From Trichoplax adhaerens (lineage: Eukaryota; Animalia; Placozoa): 64,000 bases of DNA. Shown here piece by piece: positions 5,473-44,813 of this stretch (its first letter is position 1; every line of letters begins with the position of its first letter). A program made the position numbers and the translations under genes. The notes under the pieces are model-generated. The model was not told the origin of the DNA. It made no database searches and saw nothing but the letters and a program-made list of their open reading frames with translations. The stretch covers positions 295,732 to 359,731 of the forward strand of contig NW_002060979.1 of NCBI RefSeq assembly GCF_000150275.1. Reading direction: 5' to 3'.

Positions 5473-8400
5473 ATGATATTAAAACATTTAGCTAATAGCA
5501 AGATCCTCTATGTAGCTTTGGTAAGTGCCATATTTTCCGTAAAGTAAAGATAATATCATGATTGTGTTTTAAGACTTGGTATATTTACTAGCTTGTAGCA
5601 ATAGTTATCGCGAAACGTTTGGCTGTTATAGTTATATATACCGTTATATAACCAGAATAATGCATTCTATACCTAGATAATTTCTATTTAAGTTTAAACT
5701 TTTCAGTTATTGCTGTAATAAAAACATGAAATATGGCTTATTTTCATGTCTTCGCCTTATATATTTATTTTCTGTCCGATGAAAAAGTCAGAATCTGTAT
5801 CTTAAGCCCTCTGCAGTACAACTGTAAACTTACATGTTTTTAAGATGTCTTAGTATTTGATGCAGCCTGACAGTTTATAAGTTAATATCTTCCAGTGTCA
5901 ATTTTAAACAATTTAACTAGATTTTCTTTACGTAAATGCTTGCAATCTACAATTTTGTAAATTTTCTCTTTCTAGTGGCATTCCTATATTCTCGTACGTT
6001 TTATTTACATTTCTATCTTAGACCTACCTGAAGCCTTAGTTTTTCACGGAAGAAAATTTCACTACTGTGCTTTATAATCATATAGTTATTGCATCACAAT
6101 TGCTCTTTCAATCGTTTCTTTTTATCGCAGTGCGATTGTGATTATAAATCTTAGTTTCGTAGACAATGATCTTTGATTTATTTACCGTTGCAATTTTTAT
6201 AAAGTAAAATTTAAGTCTTATTACTTAGTTTGTAAATCTTACTTTATGATTAAACTAGATCTGCGGATGTTTCTGTCAGACTCAAGCTCAAGAACAATCT
6301 ATTGGTAAGTTAAATTAATGCAGAATTTTATGTTAGTAGTGAAACCTACACCTAGGCTAATCCATGAACTCTCAGGCATTGGTTACAGTAATTCTTTAGA
6401 TATAGCATATTATTACTAATCTTTAGGGTTTATTTCTCACATTTATTTATTCAAGTATATAACTTTAGATAACATATTCTGTATCAGCATATCTTAAGTT
6501 ATTTGAAACAATTATTATTAGATATGAATGGCTAGTTATAATACGAATATTATTTCATTTATGATGAACTAATCCGAAACTTCTCTAAAATTTATAAAAT
6601 TCAGAACTGATCATTGAATAGAATCTGAGTGTAGTTATAGAATCAATATGAATCTTTTCATCAGAAGTATCTGTTAAGCTAGTTTTCATAAGATAAATAT
6701 TGTACTGTTTATTTGATAGCAATAAATTTCCGTAAGAATTAGCTTGTGCTGCAGTATTCAGAATAGTATATGTTTGTATCCATTGTTTATGACAAGAAAA
6801 AGCTTAGTTTAAGGTATATTATGAAAATGTTTTGCTGAATTTAACTTCAAAAATTTTGCCTAAGTTTTCATCTAACTTTGCTAGCATATCGAATGTTGTT
6901 TAGCATCAAAAGAAGACTGTTTAAAAAATGGCCTAAACTGTAGCTCAGATGCTGTCTGTTCATCCATGACCAACGGCTCTTATGTTACTTATATATGCTC
7001 ATGTAAATCAGGATTTAATGGAGATGGATTTAGATGTTACGGTAAGATTATTAAAAAGAAATTTTTTAAACAAATTTATAAGAGTCTGTTTCTACACTTT
7101 ATAATACCATTTATTTAACTTAAATTTATGTAAGTATCTCCATTCTTCCATTGATGTTCCATTTTGGGTTCTAAGATATTCAGCTTTGCTTATATACGGC
7201 AACATATTTTAATGATAAAATGGTTGTCTGCGACTTTATGTGAAATTTGCTTATCTTATTATCTTACTAGTCCTGATGATAGAACTTCTAAGATTATGTC
7301 TTGGCAACTTTAGTTCTAACGGAGAATCAATTTTAAAATGACAAACTACAATATTGAATTTAATCAATTGAAGAGTGAGTAGTTATTAGAAGCTTATACT
7401 TACAGTAATAACGTTATGAACTTTCAAAAATTTTATCAAGAAGTATGATTAGTAATTAGTAATATCGCTCTATCTTTACTTAAATAAACTAATAATATTA
7501 ATGAAAAACTTGTCTGAATACTAAGCGTAGGCTAGAATGTAGTGAATAGTATGAGTCAACTTGAGTTGTTGATTTGCTCTTAGATATCATAACATATACA
7601 TGGTATGAAGTTCTTTTAACAGTCCACTATCGTCATCAAAATAAACTGAAAAAATATTTACGTGAAAATTTCTTAATTTGAAGCCCAAAGCTTAAAATTA
7701 AAGGAAATGGCTTTCGGAAGTTTTCAATTTTTATATTGAATTTTAGACATTGATGAATGTGCAGCTCAAGGAATTGGTATTGGAAGTCCTTGTCCCCTAG
7801 AAAAAAATCAAGTTTGTGTTAATTCTATTGGCTCATATCGTTGTGTTTGCGCGAGCTATGCCCGTAATGCGAGCTACTTTAAAGACTGTAGAAGTAAGTC
7901 AGTAATTTTAGAGATAGTTAAATATATGATATTAAAATTGTTAATTTTATAATTTGAGGCATTGAAGAAATATAATCTCGACCTTAGAAAGTTTATTGAA
8001 TTCTTTTGTCTAAAAGAGGAAAATTTAGATTTTATTCTTCAAATGGTTATTTTACTTTTAAATATTTGGAAATTAAGGGTGCAAGTTAAATTGCGAGAAC
8101 GGAGGATATTGTCTGGTGAATAACAAGGATTGGGCATATTGCAGGCAAGTATTGAGAAACTAAGATTATTGCAGTGCTACACAATAGATATGCTGCGCTT
8201 ATCTTCGAATGAGGTGACTACTAAGAAAATAATGTAGGGTTGAAAAACTAAAGAGAAATTGATTCTAGAAACTTTGTAAATTATACCTGCAGTATTAGAG
8301 AATTTTGAGGTAGCTAACTTAAAAAGTTGACACTAATAATAATTCTAAAAATAATTATACACATATGTCACGAATGACGCTGCAATAAGAAAGAACTTAT

Positions 8401-10356
8401 TGTGACTTTGGTATAAAGTAGAAGAATTCTGGCTGAGATTATTCAGCTTTACCTACAAATATCCTTAATTTCATTAACAGAAAAATTGCCTACCAAAAGA
8501 AGCTATTTCAGTTACCAATATTACTAATTTTTTGAAGTTCAAAACACTAGTAAGCATGCAAACAAGTTCTATTGCGATTTAATAATAAAAGTTTCTACTA
8601 TCTTGCCATTAATGATTAGGTATTGCAAAATTTAATACTCATTTCGTACTCTAGTTTATGCAAGATATAAATTTAAGCCATATTTTGCGAAATTTCGTTC
8701 TACAGTCAGTTTAGGCTTAAATAAGAGGACGAATCTAGTTAGAAGATAGAATAAATAGTTTATTAAGATATTCATTTAGATATAAATACTCCAGATTGGA
8801 CGTAACCAATAAAACGGGACCTTGATCGCGCAATTATGAGTACTCCAACAGTGAGTATTTCATAAGTTGCAGACGCAGCAAGTTATTCACCGCATTGACT
8901 TAGTTATTGATTAAGTTTTACTTTATTTTTTACTTATTAACAATGATGTGCATCATTATACTGACATTTAATATTAGTATTTACAGCATGATAAATCGAA
9001 ATTACGTTAATCATAAGATTACTACTTTGTAATACTAACATCATTGTAACAGTGTACTTATTATACCTGTTCTGATGAGGATTTACTGTAAAGGCTAGTT
9101 AGAAGATAATATTTGTAGCTGAAAATACATCAGTTGAAAGGTCGCTATCAAAATAATCAAGAACTTCGTATAAGCTAGTATGAACGTGATTTTGCGGAAA
9201 AAATACCGAAGAGATATTATTTCCGAATGTAACATACAGAAATAATATATCATTTAAATTATAGTTGGCAATATAGGAGCCTTGCTTTTAAATTTACGAG
9301 CATTGGTTAACGAAAATTCTTTAGGTTTTTCTGTCTACCATTTAATAGCTCATTAAATTTATTAACCGTACTGTTTTGTTTCAGATGTGAAGCTAGTTAT
9401 ACTGGCCATCTTTGCGATAAAATTGAACCATTAGCAAGTTAGATTCTGTACCAACCTCTTAGTTAATCTATGAATTACACGCGTTTATCTGAGTTAATCG
9501 ATTTATAAATATTTCCTTACTAGGTTCGACAGTAGCCATTATTGTAGCTATATCTGTATCTGTACCAATTGGAACATTATTGGTTGGCTGTTACTTATTT
9601 CTTCGTTGGAGGAGTGAACAAGGGTAAATATGCAGATATCTTTTCCTGATACTATAACATTTTAAACATCTTCAATATGATTATATGGATTACTTCATAT
9701 TGATATTGTATAAAAATTAACCTAAAGTTTAAAATAGTGCTATAGAGTACCACTGCAGTATTTTAACCTTATCTAAGTGAATTGAATATAATCTAGATAA
9801 CTAGTGACCTACTTAAACCGTAGTTAATAATAAACTTAGGTATTGTTTAAATGAATAGATCGATATGTCGTTTTCAGTTTTAAACTGTACAACTTCGCTG
9901 CTTTGATTATTTAACATCGAGATAATAAATCTGGTATCGCCATTGCAATTATTTGACAATGTCTTATAAGTGTACGTATTTACTGATTATTTCTAATATA
10001 AATATGGTGAATATTAAAACAAATATAACTTAGATAAGATAACATATTATAAAATACTTCAAAACTAAAAATAATTTGATTAGGACAGCTGATGTACCGT
10101 ATTATATGAAATTCTCATACAGTTTAATTTTGTTTACTGTTAACAATAAGTCTAAAATATGCTTGTAAAAGATCATTTATTTCTGACTTCCTCCAATTAT
10201 TTATGGATTCAATTGAAAAGGGAGAAAAACTATCGCCGCAACAGATTAAATAGGGATCAATCTACAGTCCGCAAGTGTTTGACCGGAGAAGAAACTGCAA
10301 TGTGCAAATCGTTGAGTGAATTTGAAATGTCCAGTAAATCAAGTAATTTTGCCTAA
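5473..10356 (+). CDS. Gene A: small type I membrane protein, signal peptide-EGF-cbEGF-split EGF-TM-cytoplasmic tail (~244 aa); proEGF/TGF-alpha-like layout
   Basis: Phase-consistent exons 5473-5520 (MILKHLANSKILYVAL), 6259-6304 (ICGCFCQTQAQEQSI), 6904-7041 (EGF), 7747-7893 (DIDEC cbEGF), 8078-8144 (GC donor), 9385-9437, 9524-9623 (TM STVAIIVAISVSVPIGTLLVGCYLFL) and 10221-10356 (matches ORF 10159..10356). Total 735 nt, open to TAA. Confidence 0.8.
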
Positions 10357-12814: not shown

Positions 12815-15800
12815 ATGAAAATTGCCGTAGCTTTCGCGATTATATGCATGATGGTAATCATATTTAGTTTATCATATAACATTTAAAAATCATTTACCTT
12901 ATCTAGGGATAATCTTTTAAAACCTACACTTGACTATGTTGACCTATTGATTAAAATTATGGCTTTGTCACAAAATAGCTTTGCAACAAGATAACGCAAT
13001 ATACGATCAATAAGTCAATTCCTTGAATCACGTATCAAGGAACGATATCTGCACTATCACATACACTTTTGCTCTACTAGCAGACTACACAAAGACTTAA
13101 ACGCCTCGTATTTTACGTTAAACACTAAGTTGGACAATTCTTCTTTATTTCACGATATACTGCATTTATATGCTATTTCTCAATAGTTCATGATTCATAG
13201 TTAATACAATTAACATTAGAATCATTTACTGAATTAGATATTAATTTTAGCTACTGCTCCCTTAATGCAGACAACAGTATTTACGAACATAGACATGTAA
13301 TGACTAATACAGAATAGTCAGATTACGATATGTCCTATCACGGAACATTTCCATGATAATTTACAGTCTACCATAAGTAAATTACAATCACAATGATTGG
13401 AACTGTAAGCAGATGATTTGCATTCCCTATTATAACTATTAATTTCAGTATGTGTATAAGTGTCACTGTCATAAAAAGTCAGTGCTATATTGAAATACAG
13501 TATATCCAAATTAGAAGTTAACTAAATAAGGATAGTCTAATAGAATTATCCTAACATGGATATTTCTACTGTAATACAGTATATAACACTGTAACAGGAT
13601 TGCATAAAGTTACTAATATCAGGGCTTCCTTCAATGATAATGCTCAAAGTTTAATAGCTTATACTTAAATGTGCGTTCCATGTACTCTATATCTTAAAAA
13701 ACATATTGTACTCATTCGATATTTGGACTAAATTCACACTATCGAACAATTTAAGGCATTTCGAAATGAATATCTAATGAATAATTACATTCTGGTAATA
13801 CGATGTCTTAGGAAATTTATTAGATACTTTTATGTGATTGACTTAGTATCTTAGTAAAATCTGGCATACAGATTTATTGATAAAGTGAAATTACTGATTT
13901 AGTATCGATTGCTGTAATTAACAAAATAATGTGTTACCTCACTTTTACCTTTTCGAAATTCCTGTTAGATGCGCTGGTCTAAATAAGATTATTATGGCCA
14001 AATCAGCGATTTATTAGCCACATAATACGCGATAGATTAAATCAAATAACTAACTTAGGTTATCTTTATATTGCTTGAGTCATTTTGTTGAATGCCTTAT
14101 TTAAGTTTAGAGTAGAGCATCGCAATGATGTTAGTCATCGGCAAGATTCAATTCTTAAAAATGTTTAGGACTTGTAATAGTATTTTAATATTACGTTAAT
14201 GCTATTACGCTGATTTAGATCGTGCTTTTACCTCCCAGTGAGGGTATATCCGTTTCTACCTAGAGAAATAAGATGCTAAGAATTTTTACTTAGTCGATTT
14301 AGCCGGACAGACGATAAAATTTTACTAAATGATCTGTAGTGTGAATTATAATTCTATTTACTGTCATGTGCGGTCAACAATGCGATTTATGATTAATCTA
14401 TATGTTTGAGAGAGTATGATAAATCATTCAATTGAGAAATTCAAACATTTTCATCAAAATGTGATTTATGAGTATTTTACTTCATCCATACTGTGAGAGA
14501 TAGGTTCTTTACAAAGTGCTCACTAAAATGCGACCTAAGACAGAAAACGTGTAGGCATGATAAAAAGCAAATTATCATTAAGTTTTAGTAAGCAATGGTT
14601 AGATAAAAGTTCAGAAGTAACTATTGATATCGTAAGAAGTCATCAAAGATATCAGAAAATAATTTAAGTTCATTACTTTGAGTGTTATTACGGAGTAACC
14701 TATTGCACTCCCGAACAACTGTAGCATTTTAATATTTTTATATAATTCGGGGAAACAACTTGCTATATTTAACTAAAGAAGTTACGAATACTGATAGTGC
14801 TTTGTACTTCGATCAACTGATTTTCCTAAACTGTATTTTGATAGGTTCTATCGGCTGCTGGAAATACGTGGTGTCTCAGAAATGATTCCAACGGTAAATT
14901 TTAAATAGCATTTTTTTGAAACTATGAAACCATCAGTATCTGTATACATCCTTAACTTTAAAGTAAAGTACAAAAGGTATATATCGAATTCTGTTACGCT
15001 TGATTATGTTCTGGTTTGAAGTAGTTTTGATATTTCACCTTAAAAATTTATCCATACCGTTACAATATTTTGTCTATAATTAGAAATCGGTTATAATAGA
15101 TAAAATTTATAGAGGTGACTTGGTAATGGCAGCCAATTCGCGTCTGGATGATAAGACGATCACAAAACAAGTTACATTTTCCGTAAGTTATAATTTAAAA
15201 TCTGTATTTTTCCCCTATACTTTAAGCTATCATCGTTACTAATAAAGGTCTAATTTTCTAGGTAGCCAAAGTAATAAATCAAAGCTTAAAATTGAGAGTA
15301 TTTCCATTAACTGTTACAGTTGATAAAATTTTGTGAGTGCTTGTGTGATAGAATGGTGTATATTTTTTTACCTAAGTATTCTTTACATAGTTATTCGTAT
15401 GTGCTTTATGATAGAAACCTCATCCTTCAGAGTGATTGAATTCGTTGTAGCGAGAATATTATGATATTCAACAATTTATTTACATTCCAGTTTAACTCAG
15501 TATACAGCGGTGTTCTCAAGAGTAGATTTACTATTATTAATATTATTCTACAAAATCATTTAAAATCGATATTGGAAATTGTAATGACCGAGTAATACTC
15601 TTTTACTATTACTGTAGCTTCGCGACCTCTAACTCTTAATCTGAGTTATTCAAGTTAAGCAAATCCTTTCGATATGCAATAAACCGTCTCGACCGAGAGA
15701 ATAGTTTTAAAACTACGTTTATTATTCCGTCTGTCCGCAAGAGCGAATTCAATTTTTACCTCTCATATGATCAGTCGAAAACAGCTAAGATAAACCGGAT

Positions 15801-23260: not shown

Positions 23261-23439
23261 ATAAAATGCTACGAGCTATGGATATTGGATAGTCAATATC
23301 GAATAAATTTCGGATGCTTATACCAACTAAAAAATTACCGCAGATATCAATAAAATACTGCAGGTGCTATCAGGTTTGCTAATGTAACATCTACGTTATT
23401 AAGATTAGAAATATAATTTATAATTATGAAGATAGTACC

Positions 23440-24071
23440 TGTTACAGTGTTAAATACTGTATTACAGTAGAAATAACTATGTTAGGATAATTCTATTAGA
23501 CTATCCTTATTTAGTTAACTTCTAATTTGGATATACTGTGTTTTAATATAGCACTGACTTTTTATGACAGTGACACTTATACACATACTGAAATTAATAG
23601 TTATAATAGGGAATGCAAATCATCTACTTACAGTTCGAATCATTGTGATTGCAATTTACTTATGGTAGACTGTAAATTATCATGGAAATGTTCCGTGACA
23701 GGACATATCGTAATCTGACTATTCTGTATTAGTCATTACATGTCTATGTTCGTAAATACTGTTGTCTGCATTAAGGGAGCAGTAGCTAAAATTAATATCT
23801 AATTCAGTAAATGATTCTAATGTTAATTGTATTAACTATGAATCATGAACTATTGAGGAGTAATATATAAAAATGCAGTATATCGTGAAATAAAGTGAAT
23901 TCTCCAACTTAGTGTTTAACGTAAAATACGAGGCGTTTAAGTCTTTGTGTAGTCTGCTAGTAGAGCAAAAGTGTTTGTGATAGTGTAGATATCGTTCCTT
24001 GATACGTGGTTCAAGGAATTAACTTATTGGTCGTGCATTACGTTATCTTGCTGCAAAGCTGTTTTGTGACA
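23440..24071 (+). mobile_element. Solo LTR, family 1 (632 bp), sense orientation
   Basis: TGTTACA...TGTGACA termini with perfect 5-bp TSD gtacc (23435-23439 and 24072-24076). Internal TATATAAA (~23864) followed by AATAAA (~23889). No primer-binding site or internal domain adjacent. Confidence 0.9.
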
Positions 24072-33500: not shown

Positions 33501-36500
33501 GTAGAGTCACATTTATTATTACAAGTGATATTTTTTTAATTATAATTTATTTCCATTGACGTTTAATATTTCTCGGTGTATTTATTTACACAGTGCACAA
33601 TGCGAAATGTATCGTGGATCAATGTGCAAAAATTATTTAGCTGGAGCAAAAGTTTATGTTCCAGTAGGATTAACTCAAGAAAAGATTGAAGCCTATCTAC
33701 AAGTTACTCAAGCCCAAATCTTGACTTCATCCGCTAATGGCGGTACGGGCAGCTGCTTTAATCAAGTTTGGGAACATATTTGTTATTCAGCCTTCCCCGT
33801 ATGCCAGGGCAATGTACTTTATGGAATTTGTCGAGAAGATTGCACAAAATTCCTTGCCTCAAATTGCGTGCGACCCTATAGTGCTAACGGAATTAACATC
33901 CGACCTGATTGTTCTATACTTCCGGGAATAAATGATGTTCAATTCAAATGTTATAGTGCAATTACTGGCTATGGTTTGTAATATTCAGTTAAATTTACTT
34001 CAATATAATCTATTGCTCACTAAATACTTCCAATTTTGTTTCAATCTGATAAATATTTATTCCCGGATCCCACCTATTTAGATCATACTATTCCCACCAA
34101 TCAGCCTACAACTATTCCAGTAACTATTGCTACTACAGGGATAGTGACGACTCCAATGGCCGCAACTACCTCATCTTCTGGCCAATCTACCAACGGTGCT
34201 ACTGAAAATGGAACTAGTAGTTCTACTAATACTACTAATGGATCTGCGTCAGGTACAGCAGGTGCTGCAACGACTATGGCTGCAACTACTATGACCGCAA
34301 CTACTGCAACTATGTTCCAACCTACTACTCAAAGGTATATCATTTTTGTAGAGATCATAGTATTCGATTGGCTTAGTTAACTTTCGTGATTCTATTTGCA
34401 GTACTAGCGTAGGCCATCCATTCAATGAGCAATTATTTTGCTACTACGTTCCGGAAGGTATAGCACTCTTCTGATAGATAGTACGGTATTTTACTTGGAT
34501 TAGTTTCTTGATCGTAACCCGTATTATCGAAATGTATTTCAAGAGTTCAATTTTAACATAACAGCGAATTATCTTTGACAACGTGATCTTCTTTTGACTA
34601 AGAATATGCATATACTCGAATATCTAATTAACAGGAGAAAAACTACCATGCGATAGCTCTCCGTGCTCAAATAATGCTGAATGTATCAACATGGTCACTG
34701 AAAATTTTAGTAGCTATTACTGCAAATGCAAAATTGGCTATTTTAACGGACAAAGATGCGTTGATGGTGCGATATAATATTGAATTAATTTAAAATTTAT
34801 TTTTGAACTTTAATCCATCGATTTCAATATGAAAATTTAGTTCATTGACTGAATTTAATAAAATTTACTTTTTATTAATCGAATTTATTTGCATTATTAT
34901 TTTACTGATAGAAATCCCAGTGAAAGATATTTCCATTACTGCAAACTCTTCCATGCCTCTTAGCGGTTCTAATCTTGCATTTATATGCGAGGCTTATGGT
35001 CGACCGGCGCCCGTCATTACTTGGTATAAAGATGGAACAATCTTTCAAGCTGATAATGGCAATAACGTCATTATTTTGAATCAAGTTGTAAGCGATATTC
35101 GGGTTAGATCAGTATTAATACTGAGCCCAGTTAAAAATAGTAATGGTGGCAACTATTGGTGTACAGCAACAATTCCGCCAGAAATCATTCAGAGCAGCAA
35201 TATTACGATCGGTAAGAGCCATGATAGTACAAAGTTATAAAACTATCTTAGCTATAGCTAGGTAGTTAGGTACCTATAGAATATGCCAAGCAGAAAGAAA
35301 TCGGTATCGCATTTATCCGCTCAACTTAAAATAATAGCTAATGACTTGTCTAAGCCAATTACTTTAAAGATCACATTTTGATATTGATTACAGCAAATCA
35401 AATTCTAGAATTGTAGTGAAATGATACAACATATGCTAAATTAGAATTGATTATAGCCTTTATTAGAGCATATTTGTCAGCTCCATACAGTATTGAATTG
35501 GGTACTGCGAATCTACTAATTTTGTTGTCAATGATACGCTATTATGTATGTTTTGATTTAATATTTCTACGATTTCGGTAATTAGATCCAAATTCATGTT
35601 ATTCTGCTCCGTGTATGTTTGGGAAATGCTTCGATGAGTATGACGGATTCCAATGTGTCTGTGATCGAGGATATACCGGAGTTCAGTGTCAATCAGGTGT
35701 TAAAGAGATTTCATTAATATTAAATCTTAATTACAATTTATAAACCGAATTCATTTTAATAAATCTTTTTGGTCTCTTTAGATATCGATGAATGTTTAAA
35801 CTCACCATGTGTTCAGGGCAACTGCAAAAACTTAGCTGGATCATTTAATTGTTCTTGTAATCCAGGCTGGAAGGGAAGATTATGCAATGGTAATTGATAG
35901 CTCTAATTCCTTATAAATGTTTGAGGTAACTAATTACTATTTTATTTAAACTCGTTCAGCTTCGGTGCCTTGTTACTCTAATCCATGCGCTTATGGTACT
36001 TGTAAGAATTTATTAAACGCATATTTATGCGAATGCACACCGGGCTACACTGGTATAAATTGCGCTGAAGGTATACTTAATATTATACTTTTTTGACCTT
36101 TTTAGCGGCTAATTAATTACGAATGTCAACTATATTTACGATAAAATTATAATTTTATATGGTAATTAATGATACATATCTGATATACTGTTAGATAATA
36201 GCTATAACAACGATGATTTCATGATCATTAGATATCAATGAATGCCTACCAAATCTTTGCGTCCATGGAAGCTGTAACAATCTAGTTAACATGTTTAACT
36301 GCTCTTGTACAAATGGATGGAAAGGAAGACTTTGCAATAGTTAGTAATTATAGAAATCAATGTTGGTATTTTGAGGCTGAAACCCTAAATATAGTTTATT
36401 AACTAATGCTTTATTGCTATCTACAATGGTTACAGAAATAAACTTTTAACCTTAAAATAACTATATCTTAAAAAAACATTTTTATTTCATCATGTGCAAT

Positions 36501-39500
36501 TGAAATCAATCAATTTTTATCTTTCAGATTCCATTGGATGTACATCCAATCCTTGCTTAAATGGACAGTGTACAGATATGACAGATGGCTATACATGTAA
36601 CTGTACAGTTGGTTTCACTGGCATTCAGTGTGAAACCGGTAAATTCTTCTAGATTAGTTATTATAAATTAATCATAGTCAATCAAAATTAGTTGCCATAA
36701 GACAATTATTCCGATCTATCCATTTCAGATATTAATGAATGTGTAAGTAGTCCGTGTAATCATGGAACTTGTAATAATTTGGTCAATAAATATAACTGTA
36801 GCTGTGAAGATCGATGGAGTGGAGATTCTTGTGATAGTAAGTCAGCAGTTTAATCTAGTTAGCGTGTCGGAACTGAGCATTATCAATATCGTGCTTTAAT
36901 AAAACTAAATTTGATGCTTGAATGTTTTAATCAGTTTCATCGGGATGTGACTCTAACCCATGTATCCGTGGATTTTGCTTGAACGATAATACCATTGGAT
37001 ATAGGTGTATTTGCCCTTCGGGATATACTGGCAAGCAATGTAATACAGGTATTCCTATGATTCCATGCAAATGGTACCATAACTGTAGGGTGTAAAAATA
37101 GATTATTTATATTACATTTACGTGCATTTAGCTTTACAAAGATTTAGGATTTATATCTTTCACGCACTATAGCTCTCAAAATTAATGAGTTGTTCATTCT
37201 TAAATTATCGTATTTATACGTGGCTTAAATTCTCTATAACTAAGAAGGCTTTATCCAAATAAGTTAATGTTAAGTAGTTCTATCTGTATACTTAGCGGCC
37301 AGCATTTAATGGACAATTTGATAACGACTAGTTCTTATAATTTAAAGATATTGATGAATGTCTATCTGGCCCATGTGTCAATGGAGTATGTAACAATTTA
37401 GTTGGGCAGTATTCATGTACTTGCAATAGCGGATGGACAGGCAATTTATGTGGCACAGGTTAGATACTATGTTCCTATCATTGCGTGCTGTTTAATAATA
37501 GACGTTAGGTGTTATAGCAATGAGCAACTGATGGCTGATTTTTCTACAGACATTGATGAATGCAAAGTTGGTGGTTTCTGTTCTCCTGATGCTGTATGTA
37601 CCAATTTGATGGGCTCTTATTCTTGCACCTGTAAAGATGGCTTTATTGGAAATGGAACATATTGCAGAGGTTTATAAAATTTAGTGATATATTACAAACA
37701 AAATTTTGCCCTCCTAAATGCTCTAGCCCGATTGATTAAAGCGATTTAATAATAGAAGGAAGAGATTCTCGTAGATAGTAGTAAAGTTGACCATAATAAT
37801 AATGTTTAAAGTGACATTTAACGTGATAGCTATATCTTCAAATGACTTTCTACAGCTCCACATTTATATCCACATGGTATTAATCTTGGAGATTCGTTCT
37901 TTGGCAATTCGGATGATGGAATTTATAAAATGACGCTGCAGACAGATATTTACTATATGCAGGCATTCCATAGGGACTTATATGTACGCACTTGCTACAT
38001 ATTCTAATACCTAAAATTATTAAATATCAAAGATACTGTAATATCAGTAAATAGCTAGCGATATTCATTTGATTGCTATAGCTATAATAACTATTTTTTC
38101 TACTAAATACTGATACTAAAAGCAATTTGAATTTTCAGGTTTCAATTAACGGATATGTCAGTATTGGTACCAGATACCAAACAGCCTATCCTCGACCTTT
38201 CCCCGCACCTACCAACATATCTATTATAGCACCTTTCTTCGCAGATGCCGATGCACGAGGATATACATCATCCGGGATATTGATGCATGAATATGATACA
38301 AGTGATAATTCTACCACAGCTCAAGGTATATTAAGAAGGGCAAAACTGGATGTAGCCAACTTTCAGAATTACATGCAAAATAATCCTAGTGACACTCAGT
38401 ATGGCGTTTTCAATCAAAGTATAAATGGTTTCGTCCCTACACATGTTATCGTTATTACATGGCAAGATCTCTTACCTTCACCTAATTCATACTATGTTAA
38501 TCTGCGAACGGTAAGCTGATGGTAAACTAAATATACTAAAGTGTTTGTATAGAAAGCTATACATGATGGCTCTTAGTATACAGAAATTTAGAATCGAATT
38601 GCGGTACACCAGATTGGACTGCTAGAAATTTGAAAGTATAGCATTCTATTGTCTATTGTTTTAATTTTCATTTCGTTAACATTTATACTGTTAAAAGATG
38701 TTCTGAATATTTAAAAAGACTACTTATACAGACTTATACCTAATTAAATAACAGATAAATTAAGAATTACCGTCCAAATATATATAAATTGAGTCTATTT
38801 ACTCTACAATATATGATTGTAATTTACTGGTAATGTACGATACCAAAGACTGATGATGATTGTTGATTAAATATAGTATTATTCCTTATGAAACTACTAC
38901 CTTGCTGAAATTATAGCAGTTAATGCAGTATGTACGTATGTAAGAAAATGAACACGAATCAATTGTTTTCATGCTTTTGTAGACAAATACATTCCAACTC
39001 GTCCTAATTTCTAACGGCAAAAACCTCTTTGGATTGTTCTTATACGATATTGGTGGTATGTTGTGGTATAAAGTCAGTATATCTAGGCCTAGAAGTGGCT
39101 ATTCCTATGGTATAGCACCGTATTTTCATGAAACTTCCTATTCCGGTAGTACTACCATGCTAAGAATTGATCGTTATAACGGAAATTATGGTCAACAATC
39201 CATATGGGCATATCGATTAGATAACCCTAAAACTCCTGGAATTAATTATGATAATTTGTGTAGAAAATGGTACAATAACGAGCCCCCAGCTTCTTATTAC
39301 ACTAATTTCCTAGCAAGGCGACCTTGTCCATGTATAGCTGGACAAGCTAGCTTAGACAGGCGATTTGTGTTTAATTTCACTTCATTCTGCGCTACATCAT
39401 TATTTTCGTTTCCACGTGGAAATCTTTACGGAGTGAGTTCAGTAAAATTGGCTCAAAATTTTAATTTTTATTCCACAAGTAACTCCGTCTCTAGTTACGT

Positions 39501-42500
39501 ACTTAGTGTAGTTTTATTTTTAAGCTAACCTATTCTTTTTGATCTGATAGGTTAAGCAACGTTGTTGTTACTCAAGGGCAATCTTAAGCTTTGGAGCCTT
39601 GCTTTTGGGCAATCCAGGTGGTGCTACATTTATCTTTAGAAATGCAACTCAACAAGCGGAATCTGATACTGCCTATCAATATTGCTGTGTTGCGAGTAAT
39701 TTATGCAATTTATATTATAAGAAAAGGCCAAGTAACAATTGCCAAGGGTATCGACCTCCACGACGAGCCTGGTTTTGGGGTGATCCTCATGTCAGAACTG
39801 TTGATGGCTTAACCTACACCTTCAACGGGCTTGGTGAATATACGCTTTTGCAAACTATCGACAGCAATTACTTTAATTTGCAGGGTAGAACGATGAAAGC
39901 TATCCGCAATGTAACAGAAAAGGCTAGAGCTACGGTTTTTTCGGCATTTGCATTAAGCCAAAACGATTCTAATAAGGTTCAAGCAACGATGAATTTGGCC
40001 GAGAACGATATAGATATATTAGTTAATAGCCGAACATTAATCAAATTGAGAAATTTACCTGTCAATGAATTTCTGCCTTTTGAAAACGTACAGATATCGA
40101 GATCACTCAATGGTACTTTAATTGTTTCATTTTCTTCTGGAATTTCAGCGGAAATTGCTATGCTTAGTCAAATGCTGACAGTCGCGATGAATTTGCCGAA
40201 CTGGATCCAAGGCAATACACGCGGTCTCCTCGGTACTTTAAATGGTAATCCCTCGGATGATTATTTGAGACCCAATGGAACGTATTTGAGATCGAATGCT
40301 ACAGAGAGTGAAATTTATTACGGGTTTGGACAGCTATGTAAGTGAATAACCTTATTATTTAAACATCCTTTGTGATATATGCCAGTAATATTGGTTTGCA
40401 ATCGAAGTAGGTGTTAAATTTATGATTTCTATTAATTGAATATCTCTTAATTGTATAGATCAAATTACACCACAGGAATCACTGTTTACCTATCCTTCTG
40501 GCATAGGAACGGCAAATTATACAGATCCTTCTTTCGTACCTATATTTTCAGAAAATATACAACAGTTATTTGGTACCAATCAACAACTTTACCAACAAGC
40601 TTTACAAAGTTGCGGTAATGATATATCTTGCCTATACGATGCTGCACTAACCTTAGATTTACAAGCTGCTGTCAGTGGAAAAGATGTTGCCACTCAGTAC
40701 CAAGAAACAACTACACAATTAGGTATAATCTAGTGTCTGTCATTTAAGGATGATAATCATTTAATCCAAAAAGCTGACTATAAACTCATTGATATATTTT
40801 TTTCAAATATCTAATACAGAAAATTTCCCTCCACAAATAACTGGGATCACAATTTACAATGTCACCTTTGGTACTATATTTACAACATCAATTGAAGTTA
40901 CCGACCGAAATGAAAATGACACAGTGACAGTATCACTAGTAAATGCACCTTCTGGGGCATCATTTGACAACAAAACCAATGTGCTGACTTGGAATGTACA
41001 AACCTATCAAAATATTGTCATGGAATTTGTTGCCCTTGATTCTAAAGGCGCTAGAAGTATTTTGAGACCACAGATTATTATGTGCTATTGTGCAAATGGT
41101 GGAACTTGTGATTATAGGTATAACTTAAGTCAGTAGTAACTGTCATATCTAATGCTCATTTTTCATTTTTTACGCGACTGTAAAATTAACAAATCAATAT
41201 TACACGCGTCATAATTATATAACAAAATGATTTAGATCTGGATTAATTGAGGAAGGTTCAGTAAATCGAGTCCAGTGTCAATGCAATTCTGCCTATACTG
41301 GGATACGTTGTCTGAATGATTTCAATGCATGCTCTAACTTCCCTTGCTACGGACAAACAACTTGCACGGATAAACCAGCTCCATCATCGGGCTATACCTG
41401 CGGTCCTTGTCCATCTAGCCTAACAGGAGATGGCCAAAAATGCTATGGTTAGAATTAGTCGCACTATTCATGCTAATGTACTCACTTTATTTACAATATC
41501 ATTATTTCTCTTGCTGAATGCAGATATTAACATCTGTGGCAGTAATTCTTCGCTTTGCCATCAGCTTTGCTTGAATGGAGATGGCGGCTATCGATGCGAT
41601 TGTGAAATTGGTTATACGTTACAGAAAGATAATCGTACTTGCAAAGGTAGGTTATGCTTTCGAGCATTAATTATTTCGTCGGCTAGATGTTGTAACCCAT
41701 GAAAATTTGATAGGACACTTCAATTTTGCTCATGCTTGATAATTTACTCCTATTCCTATCTATGCCCTTGCAGATATTAACGAATGCTCTACAGTCAATA
41801 CTTGTGGCGATGCAGCTCGATGCATTAACACAAATGGATCATACTATTGCCAATGTCGAATCAACTACAATTCTACTACAATAACTTTACAAGATACAAC
41901 TCGTCAAACAGATCAACATTGCAAAGGTTTAAGACTTCCAATAAAAACTCTATACTTTTCTCTAATTTTATTCTAAAGTTACGAAGTTTGCAATACTAAT
42001 GTTAATTATTGCTTGATCCCAACAGTGCAAGCATATAACGGAAGGATGACTATAGATAGGCCCTACAGCAATCAATTGGCTGATTCTAATGCTCTACAGT
42101 ACCAAGTTTTGAGCCTAAGCGTTGTGCAGGCAGTAAGTAATTGAACGATTAAAGGACATGAAGTTAGAGTATTGCTATATACCAGTTTTTTCATCTGCTT
42201 GTTAATTTGCTTAATGATATGCATATAAAGATGTATCGTAACTAACTAGATGGTATACTTGCACTATTTCTCGTAGTTTTCCTAGCATTATTCTTCTACT
42301 TAAAAGGTTATAATATATAAATACCGAGTCTTTCGACAATTTCTTGAGACAGTCATTATAACATTTATCGAACTAGTGTACCAATACTCTAATTAATATT
42401 GAATAGTTTGATAATGCAATAATCATTAAAGAAATTCTTTAAATAGTCTTGGCAAGCTGCATCAGATAAGTAATAAAAAATATTTCAATATTACTTTAAT

Positions 42501-44250
42501 AGTTCTTTTATCAATTTTTATATATTTAGTAGTAACCAATGCCCGTATTATTTATTCTTATTAATAAAACTTTTATTGATAATTTGCTTGTTGCTTTTAG
42601 CTGTCATCGAGTATGAATCAAAATAGTCTTACAAGAGCCAATTATTTAGATTCAGTGGTAGAATCATTCACGTAAGCAGATTGGGATAATTTCTTCCTTG
42701 GAGCAATGCAAGATTATGTCAATGAAATTTACAATTTAATCCCTCTTTCACTTAAATAACTGAATGTGCGCCCTTTATTAAAAGAGTAAGCAGCAAAATG
42801 TTGTTAATTTTATATTATTAGGCAAACAATCAATGGAATGACTTCTTGCCACTATATTTTAATTTTAAGAGCTACTTCCAATATTACTGTAGTGCAGCTA
42901 AATACAGTAGCTGGTAGCGTTGTAAGAATTGGAAATTATAATGTTACTCAATCCAGCCTCTCAGGTATGAAAGTAATTTTCTTTCGTAAATTATTGCAAT
43001 ACTAATTAATTAATGATTAATCTTGGAAAGATTACAATGAATGTGAAAACTTAACTCCCTGTGGGCAAAGTAAAATTTGCAACAATACCATTGGAAGCTA
43101 TAAATGTAACTGCATAGCTGGGTATGCTAGAAATTCTTCTAATGGACTCTGCCAAGGTTAGTTTTTATTAAACTATTTCTTTACAACTTTAATTCATCAT
43201 TAATTAAATGGAAGACACTAACTGTCCTTTAATTATGGAGGATAAAGGTGATTAGTACCGTTTCATTTTGATTTTACTAATTTTCTGTAATTCTTAATTT
43301 GCAATACAGCAAATTGCCCTAGAAGTTACTGCTTAAACCAAGGTCAATGCTATTACAATAACGGCAAGATGGCATGCTCGTAAGTAATAATTTCACATAA
43401 CAGGATGTTGTATGTTTCGGTCCGAATTTGAAATAGTAGTATAAATGTCATTAAAAAATTGAAATTCTAATTTGCACCGCATCCTTTGTAATCTATCAAC
43501 AGATGTACCGCCAGCTATACCGGTGATAGGTGCCAAAACGTTCGTCTGTCAGGTAAAACTTTTAGATAAAGAATGCACAACTACAAGTATAAACATACAT
43601 CGAAACTAAATTTCAATCTAAATTCATGTCAACATGAACTAATGTCTATATTTTATTGTAGTCGTAGCAATCATCGGAATATCTTTGGGTTCTGTTGTTG
43701 GAGTAATTACAATAATTGCCCTAGTTGCATTCGCAATCAAAAAATGTAGATCAGAAAAAACGTAAGTTAGAGTAATGAACAAGGGGCTTCAAGTTAATCT
43801 ATCCTGATACTATTTTGTATTAGCAATAATATTAATACTTTATAATTTACTAGAGCTCACATAACTGATGATCAGGACGGCAAAAGTACCGAAAATATGT
43901 TTATGTCCTCTGTTTTAGTTGGTGAGTCAACATGAATCATAAAACACTAATAGATGTACTAGAACAGCAATGAAATAAATTCTTTGCCTACGATATCACA
44001 CCAAATATCTTTTTTGATAAATTAACGGTAATTATAAATACTTTATAAATAACATGAATAGGAGGTACAATTAATAGAAACTATAAGAATGATGATGAAA
44101 AGGAAAATGAATATGAAGCCGTGTAAGTTGACAATGCAATATTGTATTAAAGCTCTACGTAAATCTCAGGCTGATATTGTTACCTTACTGATCTCGCGGT
44201 ATCTAAATCAATTAATCACCATTAATCGATATAGTGAACCAATGATTTAA
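24577..44250 (+). CDS. Gene C: giant mosaic transmembrane mucin-like protein (MUC4/SUSD2/Mesh-type NIDO-AMOP-VWD core), ~3,190 aa: EGFx3-FZx2-SRCR-EGFx2-SRCR-EGFx4-SRCR-EGFx2-SRCR-FZx2-S/T stalk-EGF-Ig-EGFx9-NIDO-AMOP-VWD-cadherin-like-EGFx4-SEA-EGFx2-TM-tail
   Basis: 54 phase-consistent GT-AG exons traced: 24577-24699, 25166-25300, 26174-26305, 26647-27015, 27306-27315, 27481-27875, 28134-28472, 28627-28743, 28837-28941, 29053-29382, 29523-29639, 29999-30109, 30216-30326, 30451-30564, 30681-31007, 31430-31549, 31747-31857, 31939-32256, 32353-32383, 32825-33240, 33475-33496, 33594-33973, 34082-34334, 34402-34457, 34635-34766, 34912-35211, 35586-35696, 35782-35889, 35960-36070, 36232-36339, 36528-36638, 36729-36836, 36935-37048, 37348-37458, 37550-37669, 37856-37983, 38139-38510, 38983-39432, 39551-40337, 40459-40722, 40820-41117, 41236-41447, 41524-41646, 41774-41926, 42026-42132, 42601-42671, 42822-42964, 43031-43156, 43310-43379, 43503-43552, 43662-43761, 43854-43921, 44062-44122, 44235-44250. 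Diagnostic motifs: IRLVNG/VRLQGG..GICDD..CRQLG (SRCR); 10-Cys CRDs with CREDC; [17 protein letters not shown] (Ig); IIAPFFAD and TNTFQLVL (NIDO); RPCPC..QRCCY (AMOP); [19 protein letters not shown] (VWD). AATAAA at ~44350. Confidence 0.9.
26647..27875 (+). other. Frizzled-type cysteine-rich domains 1 and 2 of gene C
   Basis: Two exons, each encoding 10 Cys in FZ/CRD spacing (CSVYKGSFC...CQSDC; CFVYSGNVC...CKSDC), ROR/MuSK-like start C-x-x-Y-x-G-x-x-C. Confidence 0.8.
32825..33973 (+). other. Frizzled-type cysteine-rich domains 3 and 4 of gene C
   Basis: 10-Cys domains [12 protein letters not shown]...LCREDC and CEMYRGSMC...ICYSAFPVC...ICREDC. Confidence 0.85.
37856..40722 (+). other. NIDO-AMOP-VWD module of gene C with GDPH autoproteolysis motif (39779-39790)
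   Basis: ORFs 38127.., 39034.. and 39599..; sequence [31 protein letters not shown] is typical of the MUC4/SUSD2/Mesh AMOP-VWD junction. Confidence 0.9.
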
Positions 44251-44763: not shown

Positions 44764-44813
44764 NNNNNNNNNNNNNNNNNNNNNNNNNNNNNNNNNNNNN
44801 NNNNNNNNNNNNN
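44764..44813. other. Assembly gap (50 N); further gaps at 58785-58834 and 60045-60094
   Basis: Runs of N. Confidence 0.99.

What the first reader, a model, noticed from the sequence alone, without database searches (positions are those of the whole stretch)
5473..44250. Tandem family of three membrane proteins built on one shared 'cbEGF / split-EGF / 100-nt TM exon' cassette, with ectodomains from ~170 to >3,000 aa
Seen: genes A, B and C end in the same exon series. (1) A cbEGF exon with a shared C.N..G[ST]Y.C.C...[YL].RN.S motif (7747, 16358, 43031). (2) An EGF split by a phase-2 intron between Cys4 and Cys5 (67+53, 67+50 and 70+50 nt). (3) A TM exon of exactly 100 nt, phase 1 to 2, in all three (9524-9623, 17238-17337, 43662-43761). 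B and C also share a three-exon SEA domain. Known: an intron splitting the juxtamembrane EGF between Cys4 and Cys5 is characteristic of EGFR/ErbB ligand genes, whereas Notch/fibrillin-type EGFs are usually single phase-1 exons, as most other EGFs here are. Inference: this is a cluster of paralogous membrane-tethered EGF-ligand-like precursors, grading from a TGF-alpha-like mini form (A) through a SEA form (B) to a giant mucin (C). It could link membrane mucins and growth-factor precursors in an early-branching animal.
Basis: partly seen in the sequence, partly recalled or inferred. Interest (0 to 1): 0.85.

Follow-up and report, generated by a model that had tools for sequence, protein, structure and literature searches.

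The report
Three tandem genes sharing a mucin tail
In the simple animal Trichoplax, three neighbouring genes for membrane proteins end in the same exon series, with the membrane-proximal EGF split by the intron known from human MUC4 and EGF-receptor ligands; this animal has no such receptor, so they are better read as a MUC4-like protein plus two cut-down copies of its tail than as growth-factor precursors.

Summary
Genes A, B and C all end in a cbEGF exon, an EGF split in phase 2 between Cys4 and Cys5 (67+53, 67+50 and 70+50 nt), and a 100-nt TM exon, with identical intron phases.

- **Gene A:** RNA contigs from three studies splice all eight exons as predicted. One intron is GC-AG. The product is a 244-aa protein with a signal peptide, three EGFs, a TM segment and a tail.
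- **Gene C:** it is an intron-rich MUC4-like protein (4 Fz, 4 SRCR, Ig, NIDO-AMOP-VWD-C8-3, SEA) with only about 90 aa of S/T-rich sequence.
- **Gene B:** it has a diverged SEA-like region plus the cassette. Its 5' end is unresolved.

The cassette is the ancestral C-terminal module of the MUC4 family. At least six Trichoplax paralogs carry it without introns.

Stein and Staros (2006) proposed the Cys4/Cys5 splice site plus TM proximity as the mark of an ErbB ligand, and found it in vertebrate MUC3/4/12/17. The mucin-to-ligand link is therefore already published.

Trichoplax has no ErbB-type receptor, by the literature and by my own search. The cysteine spacing is Notch-like, and A and B lack the conserved Arg.

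A and B are best read as old, 5'-truncated tandem derivatives of a MUC4-like gene.

Other first-stage notes cover gene C of this same stretch. None concerns other DNA.

The parts
5473..5520 (+). Gene A exon 1: ATG and the first part of the signal peptide. The transcript starts at or before 5442.
   Evidence: RNA joint 5520|6259 in runs X5, X6 and X12; translation
6259..6304 (+). Gene A exon 2: the rest of the signal peptide. It ends in phase 1.
   Evidence: RNA joints
6904..7041 (+). Gene A exon 3: first EGF (EGF_3 type), phase 1 to 1.
   Evidence: RNA joints 6304|6904 and 7041|7747; Pfam EGF_3, 31.9 bits
7747..7893 (+). Gene A cbEGF exon (DIDEC...RNAS), 147 nt, phase 1 to 1.
   Evidence: RNA joints; Pfam EGF_CA, 34.2 bits
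8078..8144 (+). Gene A juxtamembrane EGF, Cys1-Cys4 half, 67 nt. The donor is CAG|GCAAGT (a GC-AG intron of 1240 nt).
   Evidence: RNA joint 8141-8144|9382-9385, ambiguous by 3 nt; only the GC-AG placement is canonical
9385..9437 (+). Gene A juxtamembrane EGF, Cys5-Cys6 half, 53 nt, phase 2 to 1.
   Evidence: RNA joints
9524..9623 (+). Gene A TM exon, 100 nt, phase 1 to 2.
   Evidence: RNA joints 9437|9524 and 9623|10221
10221..10356 (+). Gene A last coding exon: 44-aa cytoplasmic tail and TAA stop. The 3' UTR runs to about 10926-11060.
   Evidence: RNA contigs; translation
15100..15182 (+). Gene B SEA-like exon 1. The acceptor is at 15100 (phase 1, as in C) or 15084. The 5' exons of B were not found.
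   Evidence: Reading; alignment to C and to paralogs; inferred, no RNA laid
15262..15332 (+). Gene B SEA-like exon 2, 71 nt, phase 0 to 2. Same length and phases as in C.
16072..16268 (+). Gene B SEA-like exon 3, 197 nt, phase 2 to 1. It holds AG|TVRI at the place of the SEA cleavage motif.
16358..16486 (+). Gene B cbEGF exon (DYDEC...RNAS), 129 nt, phase 1 to 1.
   Evidence: Pfam EGF_CA, 38.4 bits
16806..16872 (+). Gene B juxtamembrane EGF, Cys1-Cys4 half, 67 nt, phase 1 to 2.
   Evidence: colinear with intronless paralogs
16981..17030 (+). Gene B juxtamembrane EGF, Cys5-Cys6 half, 50 nt, phase 2 to 1.
17238..17337 (+). Gene B TM exon, 100 nt, phase 1 to 2. A tail exon at 17427-17489 is a guess.
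   Evidence: RNA-like runs of several studies hold 0.2-0.33 of the words of 14900-17950.
24577..41973 (+). Gene C ectodomain exons.
- About 25 single-exon EGFs.
- Fz x4: 26625-27035, 27380-27892, 32763-33245, 33529-33978.
- SRCR x4: 28109-28477, 29016-29435, 30641-31021, 31926-32258.
- S/T-rich stretch: 34024-34377.
- Ig: 34833-35237.
- NIDO: 38091-38516 and 38983-39225.
- AMOP: from about 39255.
- VWD: 39551-40342.
- C8-3_MUC4: 40440-40730.
- He_PIG: 40765-41133.

The 5' end was not determined.
   Evidence: Pfam; open segments; homology blocks
42026..42132 (+). Gene C SEA exon 1, 107 nt, phase 1 to 0.
   Evidence: The joined three exons score 32.8 bits (E = 1.4e-9) against a profile of the paralogs' Pfam-positive SEA domains; the best of 400 shuffles scores 9.1 bits.
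42601..42671 (+). Gene C SEA exon 2, 71 nt, phase 0 to 2.
42822..42964 (+). Gene C SEA exon 3, 143 nt, phase 2 to 1. An in-frame alternative acceptor lies at 42870. The long form is needed to align with the paralogs' SEA.
43031..43156 (+). Gene C cbEGF exon (DYNEC...RNSS), 126 nt, phase 1 to 1.
   Evidence: Pfam EGF_CA, 39.1 bits
43310..43379 (+). Gene C juxtamembrane EGF, Cys1-Cys4 half, 70 nt, phase 1 to 2.
43503..43552 (+). Gene C juxtamembrane EGF, Cys5-Cys6 half (…YTGDRC), 50 nt, phase 2 to 1.
43662..43761 (+). Gene C TM exon, 100 nt, phase 1 to 2.
43854..44126 (+). Gene C cytoplasmic tail exons, 43854-43921 and 44062-44126. The protein ends ...EYEAV, with a TAA stop at 44124-44126.
   Evidence: The tail aligns with the P0004 tail.

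Best explanation
The window comes from Trichoplax adhaerens. It holds one full-length, intron-rich member of the metazoan MUC4-like family (gene C) and, upstream on the same strand, two old, 5'-truncated tandem derivatives of such a gene (A and B).

**Shared module.** All three keep the family's C-terminal module: [SEA]-cbEGF-EGF-TM-short tail, with its original introns. One of those introns is the phase-2 intron between Cys4 and Cys5 of the juxtamembrane EGF. Vertebrate MUC4, MUC3/12/17 and IMPG2, and the ErbB-ligand genes, also have an intron at that place.

**The three proteins.**
- A is an expressed 244-aa type-I membrane protein: signal peptide, three EGFs, TM segment, 44-aa tail.
- B has a diverged SEA-like domain, then cbEGF, EGF and TM.
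- C places 4 Fz, 4 SRCR, Ig, about 25 EGFs and NIDO-AMOP-VWD-C8-3 in front of the same stalk.

**Likely function (inferred).** They are cell-surface glycoproteins. The Ca-binding cbEGF, with a conserved N-glycosylation sequon RN[AS]S, and the juxtamembrane EGF would form a rigid stalk holding the ectodomain off the membrane. They would serve as glycocalyx, adhesion or sensing proteins. They would not signal through an ErbB receptor, because this animal has none.

**What is shown:** exon structures, RNA for A, domain content, homology to the paralogs, and absence of an ErbB-type receptor.

**What is inferred:** the direction of evolution (truncation of a mucin-like gene), the age of the intron, and the function.
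For: - **Organism:** the assembly has the same 9,661,127-base scaffold as the contig that carries TRIADDRAFT_54448, and a locus 99% identical to a Trichoplax sp. H2 protein.
- **Exon structure:** exon lengths and phases are identical or nearly so across A, B and C.
- **Gene A RNA:** all junctions appear in RNA contigs of three studies.
- **Gene C domains:** NIDO, AMOP, VWD, C8-3_MUC4, Fz, SRCR and Ig by Pfam.
- **Homology to paralogs:** the spliced cassettes align colinearly, across every junction, with the C-termini of intronless paralogs P0004 and P0002. E-values are 3e-38 for C, 2e-20 for A and 5e-18 for B.
- **SEA in the paralogs:** Pfam SEA gives E = 2.7e-10 and 5.2e-8. C's three exons match a profile of their SEA domains at E = 1.4e-9.
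- **Family-wide module:** my pattern scan found an EGF directly before the TM at the end of 52 of the 153 proteins held. These include amphioxus proteins with Fz, SEA, NIDO and VWD.
- **Intron in vertebrates:** the Cys4/Cys5 splice site is reported for vertebrate MUC3/4/12/17, IMPG2, meprins and ErbB ligands (PMC1618406).
- **No EGFR:** reported absent in the literature (PMC4914847) and not found by my search.
- **Expression of a relative:** a MUC4-like glycoprotein is expressed in placozoan dorsal epithelial cells and was proposed as a glycocalyx component (PMC11452194).
Against: - The tree of cbEGF plus EGF (77 columns) neither groups A, B and C nor rejects grouping them (AU p = 0.49). Tandem origin therefore rests on position, shared introns and the shared RN[AS]S motif.
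- The shared introns may be ancestral characters rather than signs of close kinship.
- A aligns with the two-cbEGF form of the paralogs, while B and C have one cbEGF. A is therefore not a simple copy of today's C.
- No RNA was laid on B or C. B's 5' end and signal peptide were not found.
- B's SEA is not significant against the profile: 7.2 bits, reached by 4 of 500 shuffles.
- The phase of the vertebrate intron was not checked.
- The function is wholly inferred.
Confidence: 0.72

Rival explanations
1. A, B and C are membrane-tethered precursors of EGF-receptor-type ligands. The juxtamembrane EGF would be shed, or presented from the membrane, and would activate a receptor tyrosine kinase.
For: - All three meet both Stein-Staros criteria: a splice site between Cys4 and Cys5, and an EGF next to the TM (PMC1618406).
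- C and the paralogs keep G-x-R-C before Cys6.
- Human EGF is among the PDB matches of a paralog's juxtamembrane EGF, at 24 bits.
- Barberan et al. list one putative EGF-type ligand in T. adhaerens, T53737. I could not tell whether it is gene A.
Against: - T. adhaerens has no EGFR (PMC4914847).
- In this genome, receptor L domains with a furin-like region and a kinase occur only in an insulin-receptor-type tandem cluster with the order L, furin-like, L, fn3, kinase. The one domain-IV hit is a proprotein convertase.
- The cysteine spacing is C-x3/4-C-x5-C-x8/9-C-x-C-x8-C. It aligns without gaps to Notch repeats at 28.7 bits. The ligand spacing C-x7-C...C-x10-13-C is quoted from my own knowledge.
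- A (GHLC) and B (GPTC) lack the Arg.
- An extra intron separates the EGF from the TM exon, whereas in ErbB-ligand genes the second EGF exon also encodes the TM (own knowledge).
- The same criteria are met by proteins never shown to be ligands.
Confidence: 0.1
2. A and B are decaying partial duplicates of the 3' end of a MUC4-like gene. They may be transcribed but have no function of their own.
For: - A, B and C sit on very long branches (3.4, 4.1 and 2.3 changes per column) compared with the paralogs.
- B's SEA-like region is hardly recognisable.
- No signal-peptide exon was found for B.
- Two of the three strain differences seen in the A coding sequence change the amino acid.
Against: - A has an intact 244-aa reading frame with a signal peptide, all 18 EGF cysteines, a TM segment and a tail. 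It is spliced cleanly in three studies at contig depths of 25-52.
- B keeps all 12 cysteines of its two EGFs, open frames, matching phases and usable splice sites over seven exons, despite only 22-39% identity to its relatives. That is hard to explain without selection.
Confidence: 0.1
3. The shared cassette does not come from local tandem duplication. A and B would have arisen separately, by exon shuffling or duplication from different intron-bearing family members, and lie next to C by later rearrangement or chance.
For: - The tree is unresolved. B's best identity is to paralog L003 (39%) and C's is to L001 (50%).
- A corresponds to the cbEGF-cbEGF-EGF form of the paralogs, not to the single-cbEGF form of B and C.
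Against: - All three lie on the same strand within 39 kb.
- All other copies found in this genome lack the introns, so no other intron-bearing donor is known.
- A, B and C alone share RN[AS]S where the paralogs have G[ND]PYS.
- A's best identity is to C, at 45%.
Confidence: 0.12

Closest known systems
Vertebrate MUC4 (sialomucin complex) and invertebrate 'mucin-4-like' or 'mucin-like' proteins
   Same: Gene C has NIDO, AMOP, VWD and C8-3_MUC4 in order, followed by EGFs, a juxtamembrane EGF and a TM segment. The juxtamembrane EGF of vertebrate MUC4 is reported to have a splice site between Cys4 and Cys5 (PMC1618406).
   Different: C adds 4 Fz, 4 SRCR, an Ig and a SEA domain. It has only about 90 aa of S/T-rich sequence and no tandem-repeat mucin domain. 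MUC4 modulates ErbB2, whereas Trichoplax has no ErbB. A and B lack the NIDO-AMOP-VWD core altogether.
SEA-EGF-TM membrane mucins MUC3, MUC12, MUC13, MUC17 and the proteoglycan IMPG2
   Same: B, and the end of C, have a SEA(-like) domain followed by EGFs and a TM segment. For MUC3/12/17 and IMPG2, the EGF next to the TM has the Cys4/Cys5 splice site (PMC1618406).
   Different: B has no PTS or mucin domain. The SEA of B is barely detectable. C lacks the G|SVVV autoproteolysis motif (it has NG|MTSC), and B has G|TVRI. Those vertebrate genes were not compared by sequence here.
ErbB/EGFR ligand precursors (TGF-alpha, EGF, neuregulins, Spitz, LIN-3)
   Same: A is a small type-I membrane protein with an EGF a few residues from the TM segment, and that EGF is split between Cys4 and Cys5.
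   Different: There is no cognate receptor in the genome. The cysteine spacing is Notch-like. A has three EGFs, whereas the ligand survey required one (PMC4914847). A and B have no Arg before Cys6. The TM segment lies on its own exon.
Intron-poor Trichoplax paralogs, such as the H2 'Mucin-like protein' RDD42220.1 (P0004) and TRIADDRAFT_54448 and _62718
   Same: They share the SEA-cbEGF-EGF-TM-tail module, colinear with A, B and C at 22-50% identity. They also have NIDO-AMOP-VWD, and some have SRCR.
   Different: Their cassette is one continuous open frame with no introns. They have two cbEGFs after the SEA, a canonical G|S[IV][IV] SEA motif, and G[ND]PYS instead of RN[AS]S.
Amphioxus Fz-SEA-NIDO-VWD-EGF-SEA-EGF-TM proteins (XP_066276376.1 = P0015, and P0016)
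   Same: They combine Frizzled-type CRDs (and SRCR in P0016, by reading its sequence) with the MUC4-like core and a SEA-EGF-TM end, as C does.
   Different: They have large PTS regions, more SEA and Fz copies, and a thyroglobulin domain. Their gene structure could not be examined.

Membership tests
ErbB/EGFR-ligand precursors (criteria of Stein and Staros 2006) | [quoted passage not shown] | tested here: met
   A by RNA. B and C by sequence, phase and colinearity with paralogs. The intron is phase 2, in the codon between Cys4 and Cys5.
ErbB/EGFR-ligand precursors (criteria of Stein and Staros 2006) | EGF module close to the transmembrane domain | tested here: met
   About 5 to 10 residues lie between Cys6 and the hydrophobic stretch in A, B and C.
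ErbB/EGFR-ligand precursors | [quoted passage not shown] | tested here: not met
   C has GDRC, but A has GHLC and B has GPTC. The feature is met in C only.
ErbB/EGFR-ligand precursors | Ligand-type cysteine spacing (C-x7-C-x4/5-C-x10-13-C-x-C-x8-C; the consensus is quoted from my own knowledge) | tested here: not met
   The spacing is C-x3/4-C-x5-C-x8/9-C-x-C-x8-C. A paralog's module aligns without gaps to Notch EGF repeats.
ErbB/EGFR-ligand precursors | A cognate ErbB-type receptor (L, furin-like, L, domain IV, TM, kinase) in the same genome | tested here: not met
   Recep_L and Furin-like hits belong to insulin-receptor-type genes with fn3 and a kinase. The one GF_recep_IV hit is a proprotein convertase. 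The literature reports 0 EGFR in T. adhaerens (PMC4914847). A six-frame, exon-wise search can miss divergent genes.
ErbB/EGFR-ligand precursors | Binding to and activation of the receptor | not testable with these tools
   This needs an experiment, and no candidate receptor exists to model.
MUC4-like (NIDO-AMOP-VWD) membrane proteins | NIDO, AMOP, VWD and C8-3_MUC4 in that order | tested here: met
   Met for gene C only: NIDO 39.6 and 39.4 bits, AMOP 24.2 bits (just under its cut-off of 25), VWD 62.2 bits, C8-3_MUC4 33.2 bits. A and B have none of these.
MUC4-like (NIDO-AMOP-VWD) membrane proteins | C-terminal EGF(s), single TM segment and short tail | tested here: met
   My pattern scan found the same end in 52 of the 153 proteins held.
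MUC4-like (NIDO-AMOP-VWD) membrane proteins | Large PTS (mucin) domain | tested here: inconclusive
   C has one S/T/A-rich stretch of about 90 aa at 34024-34377 with no Pfam hit. Tandem repeats were not searched for with TRF.
SEA-EGF-TM membrane mucins (MUC3/12/13/17 type) | SEA domain before the EGF(s) | tested here: inconclusive
   - **C:** 32.8 bits (E = 1.4e-9) against a profile of Pfam-positive paralog SEA domains.
- **B:** 2.9 and 7.2 bits, within the range of shuffles. B against C by global alignment gives z = 5.6.
- **Single exons:** they give no Pfam hit.
SEA-EGF-TM membrane mucins (MUC3/12/13/17 type) | G|SVVV-type autoproteolysis site | tested here: not met
   C has NG|MTSC and B has AG|TVRI at the aligned place. 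The intronless paralogs have G|S[IV][IV].

The most novel reading that the evidence does not exclude
The A-B-C array may be a living record of how small EGF-TM 'growth-factor-like' precursors arise from the stalk of a MUC4-like protein by 5' truncation. The phase-2 Cys4/Cys5 intron would be a fossil older than the split of placozoans and bilaterians. ErbB-type ligands and membrane-mucin EGFs would then descend from one juxtamembrane EGF-TM module. Gene A would still act as a tethered or shed signal through a receptor other than ErbB, in an animal that lost EGFR.
Probability: 0.12. Interest if true: 0.75.

Novelty: new variant of a known kind. Interest (0 to 1): 0.45.

Why it matters
If the Cys4/Cys5 intron of the juxtamembrane EGF is truly the same intron in placozoan MUC4-like genes, vertebrate membrane mucins and ErbB ligands, the juxtamembrane EGF-TM module dates to the base of animals. 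The Trichoplax array would then show, in one locus, a route from giant surface glycoprotein to minimal EGF-TM protein.

The array also shows that the Stein-Staros 'ligand signature' occurs where no ErbB receptor exists. It cannot by itself be used to predict ligands.

The contrast between one intron-rich gene and at least six intronless paralogs offers a test case for intron loss, by retroposition or by conversion from cDNA, in a gene family of an early-branching animal.

Practically, gene A is a well-supported small membrane protein, and I found no annotated protein for it.

Tried and rejected
- **Tree of the cbEGF plus juxtamembrane EGF** (A, B, C, five intronless paralogs, P0002). It is unresolved. 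All inner branches are weak, A, B and C sit on long branches, and AU p = 0.49 for A+B+C held together. It neither supports nor rejects a common origin.
- **Genome-wide DNA pattern for the Cys5-Cys6 exon**. There are 133 hits against 21 in the control, but most are unsplit EGFs whose Ser codon AGY precedes Cys5. It did not pick out further split EGFs.
- **Contig C1119.** It at first looked like an intronless copy of C (85% identity, 781-aa 'open frame'). The frame is a run of N. The contig is a 92-96% identical duplicate or haplotig of window 41776-47152, introns included, and has single-base indels in exons. It is not a retrocopy. Exon versus intron divergence (2.9% versus 4.8%, p = 0.09) says nothing firm.
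- **Search for annotated proteins of A, B or C.** The representative search with the VWD exon found only paralogs at 57% identity or less. The word search with the P0004 C-terminus was swamped by fibrillin-like proteins. None of the 268 proteins fetched matches the window at 80% identity or more.
- **Gene B's 5' end.** There is no cysteine-rich exon between 11.0 and 15.1 kb and no convincing signal-peptide exon. The candidate MKIAVAFAIICMM at 12815-12853 is untested.
- **Literature on intron phase** in ErbB-ligand or MUC4 genes gave nothing usable.

Full report
**Source**

The window is from Trichoplax adhaerens. Earlier notes of the scan say so, and I checked it in part. The assembly has 105.6 Mb in 1414 contigs. 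One contig is 9,661,127 bases long, the same length as the contig that carries TRIADDRAFT_54448. A locus elsewhere in the assembly is 99% identical to a Trichoplax sp. H2 protein. The window is AT-rich, about 30% G+C.

**Observation**

In all three genes the series is as follows.

| Exon | A | B | C | Phase in -> out |
|---|---|---|---|---|
| cbEGF | 7747-7893 | 16358-16486 | 43031-43156 | 1 -> 1 |
| EGF, Cys1-Cys4 | 8078-8144 | 16806-16872 | 43310-43379 | 1 -> 2 |
| EGF, Cys5-Cys6 | 9385-9437 | 16981-17030 | 43503-43552 | 2 -> 1 |
| TM (100 nt) | 9524-9623 | 17238-17337 | 43662-43761 | 1 -> 2 |

- The split lies in the codon of the single residue between Cys4 and Cys5.
- The three cbEGF exons pass the Pfam EGF_CA cut-off.
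- They share D-x-[DN]-E-C at the start and RN[AS]S, an N-glycosylation sequon, near the end.
- B and C share three further exons upstream, with phases ending 0, 2 and 1. The middle exon is 71 nt in both.
- About 25 other EGFs of gene C each lie in one open segment. The split is peculiar to the juxtamembrane EGF.

**RNA**

The look-up of sequencing runs on gene B (14900-17950) listed RNA-like runs of several studies that hold 0.2 to 0.33 of the sampled words. That is about the share of the stretch that is exon. It suggests that B is transcribed but does not show it.

Reads were laid on gene A (window 5300-11200), using runs from four studies.
- Three runs gave spliced contigs with joints 5520|6259, 6304|6904, 7041|7747, 7893|8078, 8144|9385, 9437|9524 and 9623|10221.
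- One 1336-nt contig spans all eight exons.
- The 8144|9385 joint is ambiguous by 3 nt. Only the placement CAG|GCAAGT...AG is canonical, so this is a GC-AG intron of 1240 nt.
- The spliced frame gives a 244-aa protein: signal peptide, EGF_3-type EGF, cbEGF, EGF, TM segment and a 44-aa tail.

Gene A is therefore real and expressed. No RNA was laid on B or C.

**What gene C is**

- Pfam on single exons finds four Fz, four SRCR, an Ig, NIDO (in two exons), AMOP, VWD, the MUC4-type C8-3 domain and a He_PIG domain.
- NIDO-AMOP-VWD-C8-3 is the core of MUC4.
- C has one S/T-rich stretch of about 90 aa, so 'giant mucin' overstates it.
- Its stop is at 44126, not 44250.
- Homology blocks alone give about 2,470 aa. 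With the Fz, Ig, SEA and remaining EGF exons, roughly 3,000 aa or more is plausible, but the 5' end was not determined.

**The cassette is the family's tail**

- A full HMMER search with the VWD exon found 2538 relatives.
- Among the 153 proteins then held, 52 end in an EGF directly before a TM segment. They include vertebrate MUC4-like proteins and amphioxus proteins with Fz, SEA, NIDO, VWD, C8-3, EGF, a final SEA, an EGF and a TM segment.
- The nearest relatives are placozoan 'mucin-like proteins'.
- The spliced cassettes of A, B and C, built only inside the sandbox, align colinearly and across every junction with the C-termini of P0004 and P0002. E-values are 3e-38, 2e-20 and 5e-18 for C, A and B.
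- This supports the junctions of B and C independently of RNA.
- A's three EGFs correspond to cbEGF-cbEGF-EGF of the paralogs. B and C have one cbEGF fewer.

**SEA**

- P0002 and P0004 have Pfam SEA domains.
- A profile of six paralog SEA domains scores C's three joined exons at 32.8 bits (E = 1.4e-9). The best of 400 shuffles scores 9.1 bits.
- B scores within the range of shuffles: 2.9 bits, or 7.2 bits with C added to the profile, a score reached by 4 of 500 shuffles.
- A global B-versus-C alignment stands 5.6 SD above shuffles, and the exon structure matches. B's domain is best called SEA-like.
- At the place of the G|SVVV autoproteolysis site the paralogs have G|S[IV][IV], B has G|TVRI and C has G|MTSC.

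**Intron-rich versus intronless**

- A search of the whole assembly with P0004 found at least ten paralogous loci, on C1406, C1409, C1414 and in a cluster at C1412:3.92-3.99 Mb. Their open frames reach 1500 to 2156 aa.
- The last 400 residues of P0004 (SEA to tail) are one continuous frame in L001.
- Five paralogs carry SEA-cbEGF-cbEGF-EGF-TM in one open frame, and a sixth (L010) has its EGFs and TM segment in one frame.
- In this genome, then, the introns of the cassette were seen only in A, B and C.
- Because vertebrate MUC4 and others have a splice site at the same place (see below), the introns are more likely ancestral and lost in the founder of the intronless subfamily. This is inference.

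**Do A, B and C cluster?**

- A tree of cbEGF plus EGF (77 columns) is unresolved, with very long branches for A, B and C.
- The AU test does not reject holding them together (p = 0.49). It does not show a clade either.
- For a local origin speak the shared strand and neighbourhood, the shared introns, the RN[AS]S motif (the paralogs have G[ND]PYS), and A's best identity being to C (45%).
- The copies are old: identities are 30-45% and the introns are not alignable.

**Comparison with ErbB ligands**

- Stein and Staros (PMC1618406) characterise ErbB ligands by a splice site between Cys4 and Cys5 and by closeness to the TM domain. A, B and C meet both.
- The same paper reports the signature in mucins 3, 4, 12 and 17, IMPG2 and meprins. 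It notes that only MUC4 has been tied to ErbB2. The link between membrane mucins and ligand precursors is therefore published.
- Barberan et al. (PMC4914847) report no EGFR in T. adhaerens or cnidarians. They list one putative single-EGF ligand, T53737, whose relation to gene A I could not test.
- My own search agrees:
  - Receptor L domains with a furin-like region and a kinase occur only in a tandem cluster of insulin-receptor-type genes with the order L, furin-like, L, fn3, kinase.
  - The domain-IV hit is a proprotein convertase.
  - A third L-like hit lies in a large kinase-less surface protein.
- The cysteine spacing of the juxtamembrane EGFs is that of Notch-type repeats. A paralog's module matches Notch repeats without gaps (28.7 bits) and human EGF with gaps (24 bits).
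- A and B lack the Arg before Cys6.
- The TM segment has its own exon.
- The ligand reading is thus not excluded in a wide sense, since another receptor is possible. As 'ErbB ligand' it fails tested defining features.

**Function**

- A placozoan MUC4-like glycoprotein is expressed in dorsal epithelial cells and was proposed as part of their glycocalyx (PMC11452194). I do not know whether that gene is C.
- I infer that the cassette is a glycosylated, Ca-stabilised stalk with a membrane anchor.
- C would be a surface sensing or adhesion glycoprotein.
- A and B would be minimal versions whose roles are open.

**Limits**

- Joined spliced sequences were not sent to any search or fold tool.
- Other first-stage notes (s1-790333, s1-790366, s1-790417) concern gene C of this same stretch.

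Noticed in passing
window 12957-13598 and 23438-24080 (opposite strands): There are two copies of a repeat of about 632 bp, 92-97% complementary, bracketing gene B and the B-C spacer. The same element has at least 40 copies at 97-98% identity across the genome, from 663 first-look candidates. It looks like a young, high-copy, non-autonomous mobile element.
   Followed up: partly
G000:C1406:13235-18208 (L001); C1412:3.92-3.99 Mb (L002, L004, L006, L007, L009); C1409:4.29 Mb (L003); C1414:10.95 Mb (L010): At least ten MUC4-like paralogs have open frames of 1500 to 2156 aa and almost no introns. Gene C in the window has dozens of exons. This suggests that a retrocopy, or a wholesale intron loss, founded a tandemly expanded subfamily.
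   Followed up: partly
G000:C1119 (L026, 7419 bases, 2569 of them N): This unplaced small scaffold is 92-96% identical to window 41776-47152, introns included. It has single-base indels inside exons of gene C. It is a haplotig, a recent segmental duplicate or a poor assembly.
   Followed up: partly
window 8145-9384: This is a GC-AG intron (CAG|GCAAGT...TTTCAG) of 1240 nt inside the juxtamembrane EGF of gene A, used in RNA of three studies.
   Followed up: yes
G000:C1412:7.17-7.21 Mb (L011-L016, L018, L019): This is a tandem cluster of about four insulin-receptor-type genes, with the order Recep_L, Furin-like, Recep_L, fn3, tyrosine kinase.
   Followed up: partly
window 44062-44126: Gene C ends in ...NEYEAV. 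A C-terminal Val after a short acidic stretch could be a PDZ-type binding end. This was not tested.
   Followed up: no
window about 44760-44810, and elsewhere: The window holds 152 N in all. One run lies just downstream of gene C.
   Followed up: no
window 6905, 6994, 7783: RNA contigs of different studies differ from the assembly in the gene A coding sequence. One difference is silent (A32) and two change the residue (I62T, G90E). These are strain or allele differences.
   Followed up: partly
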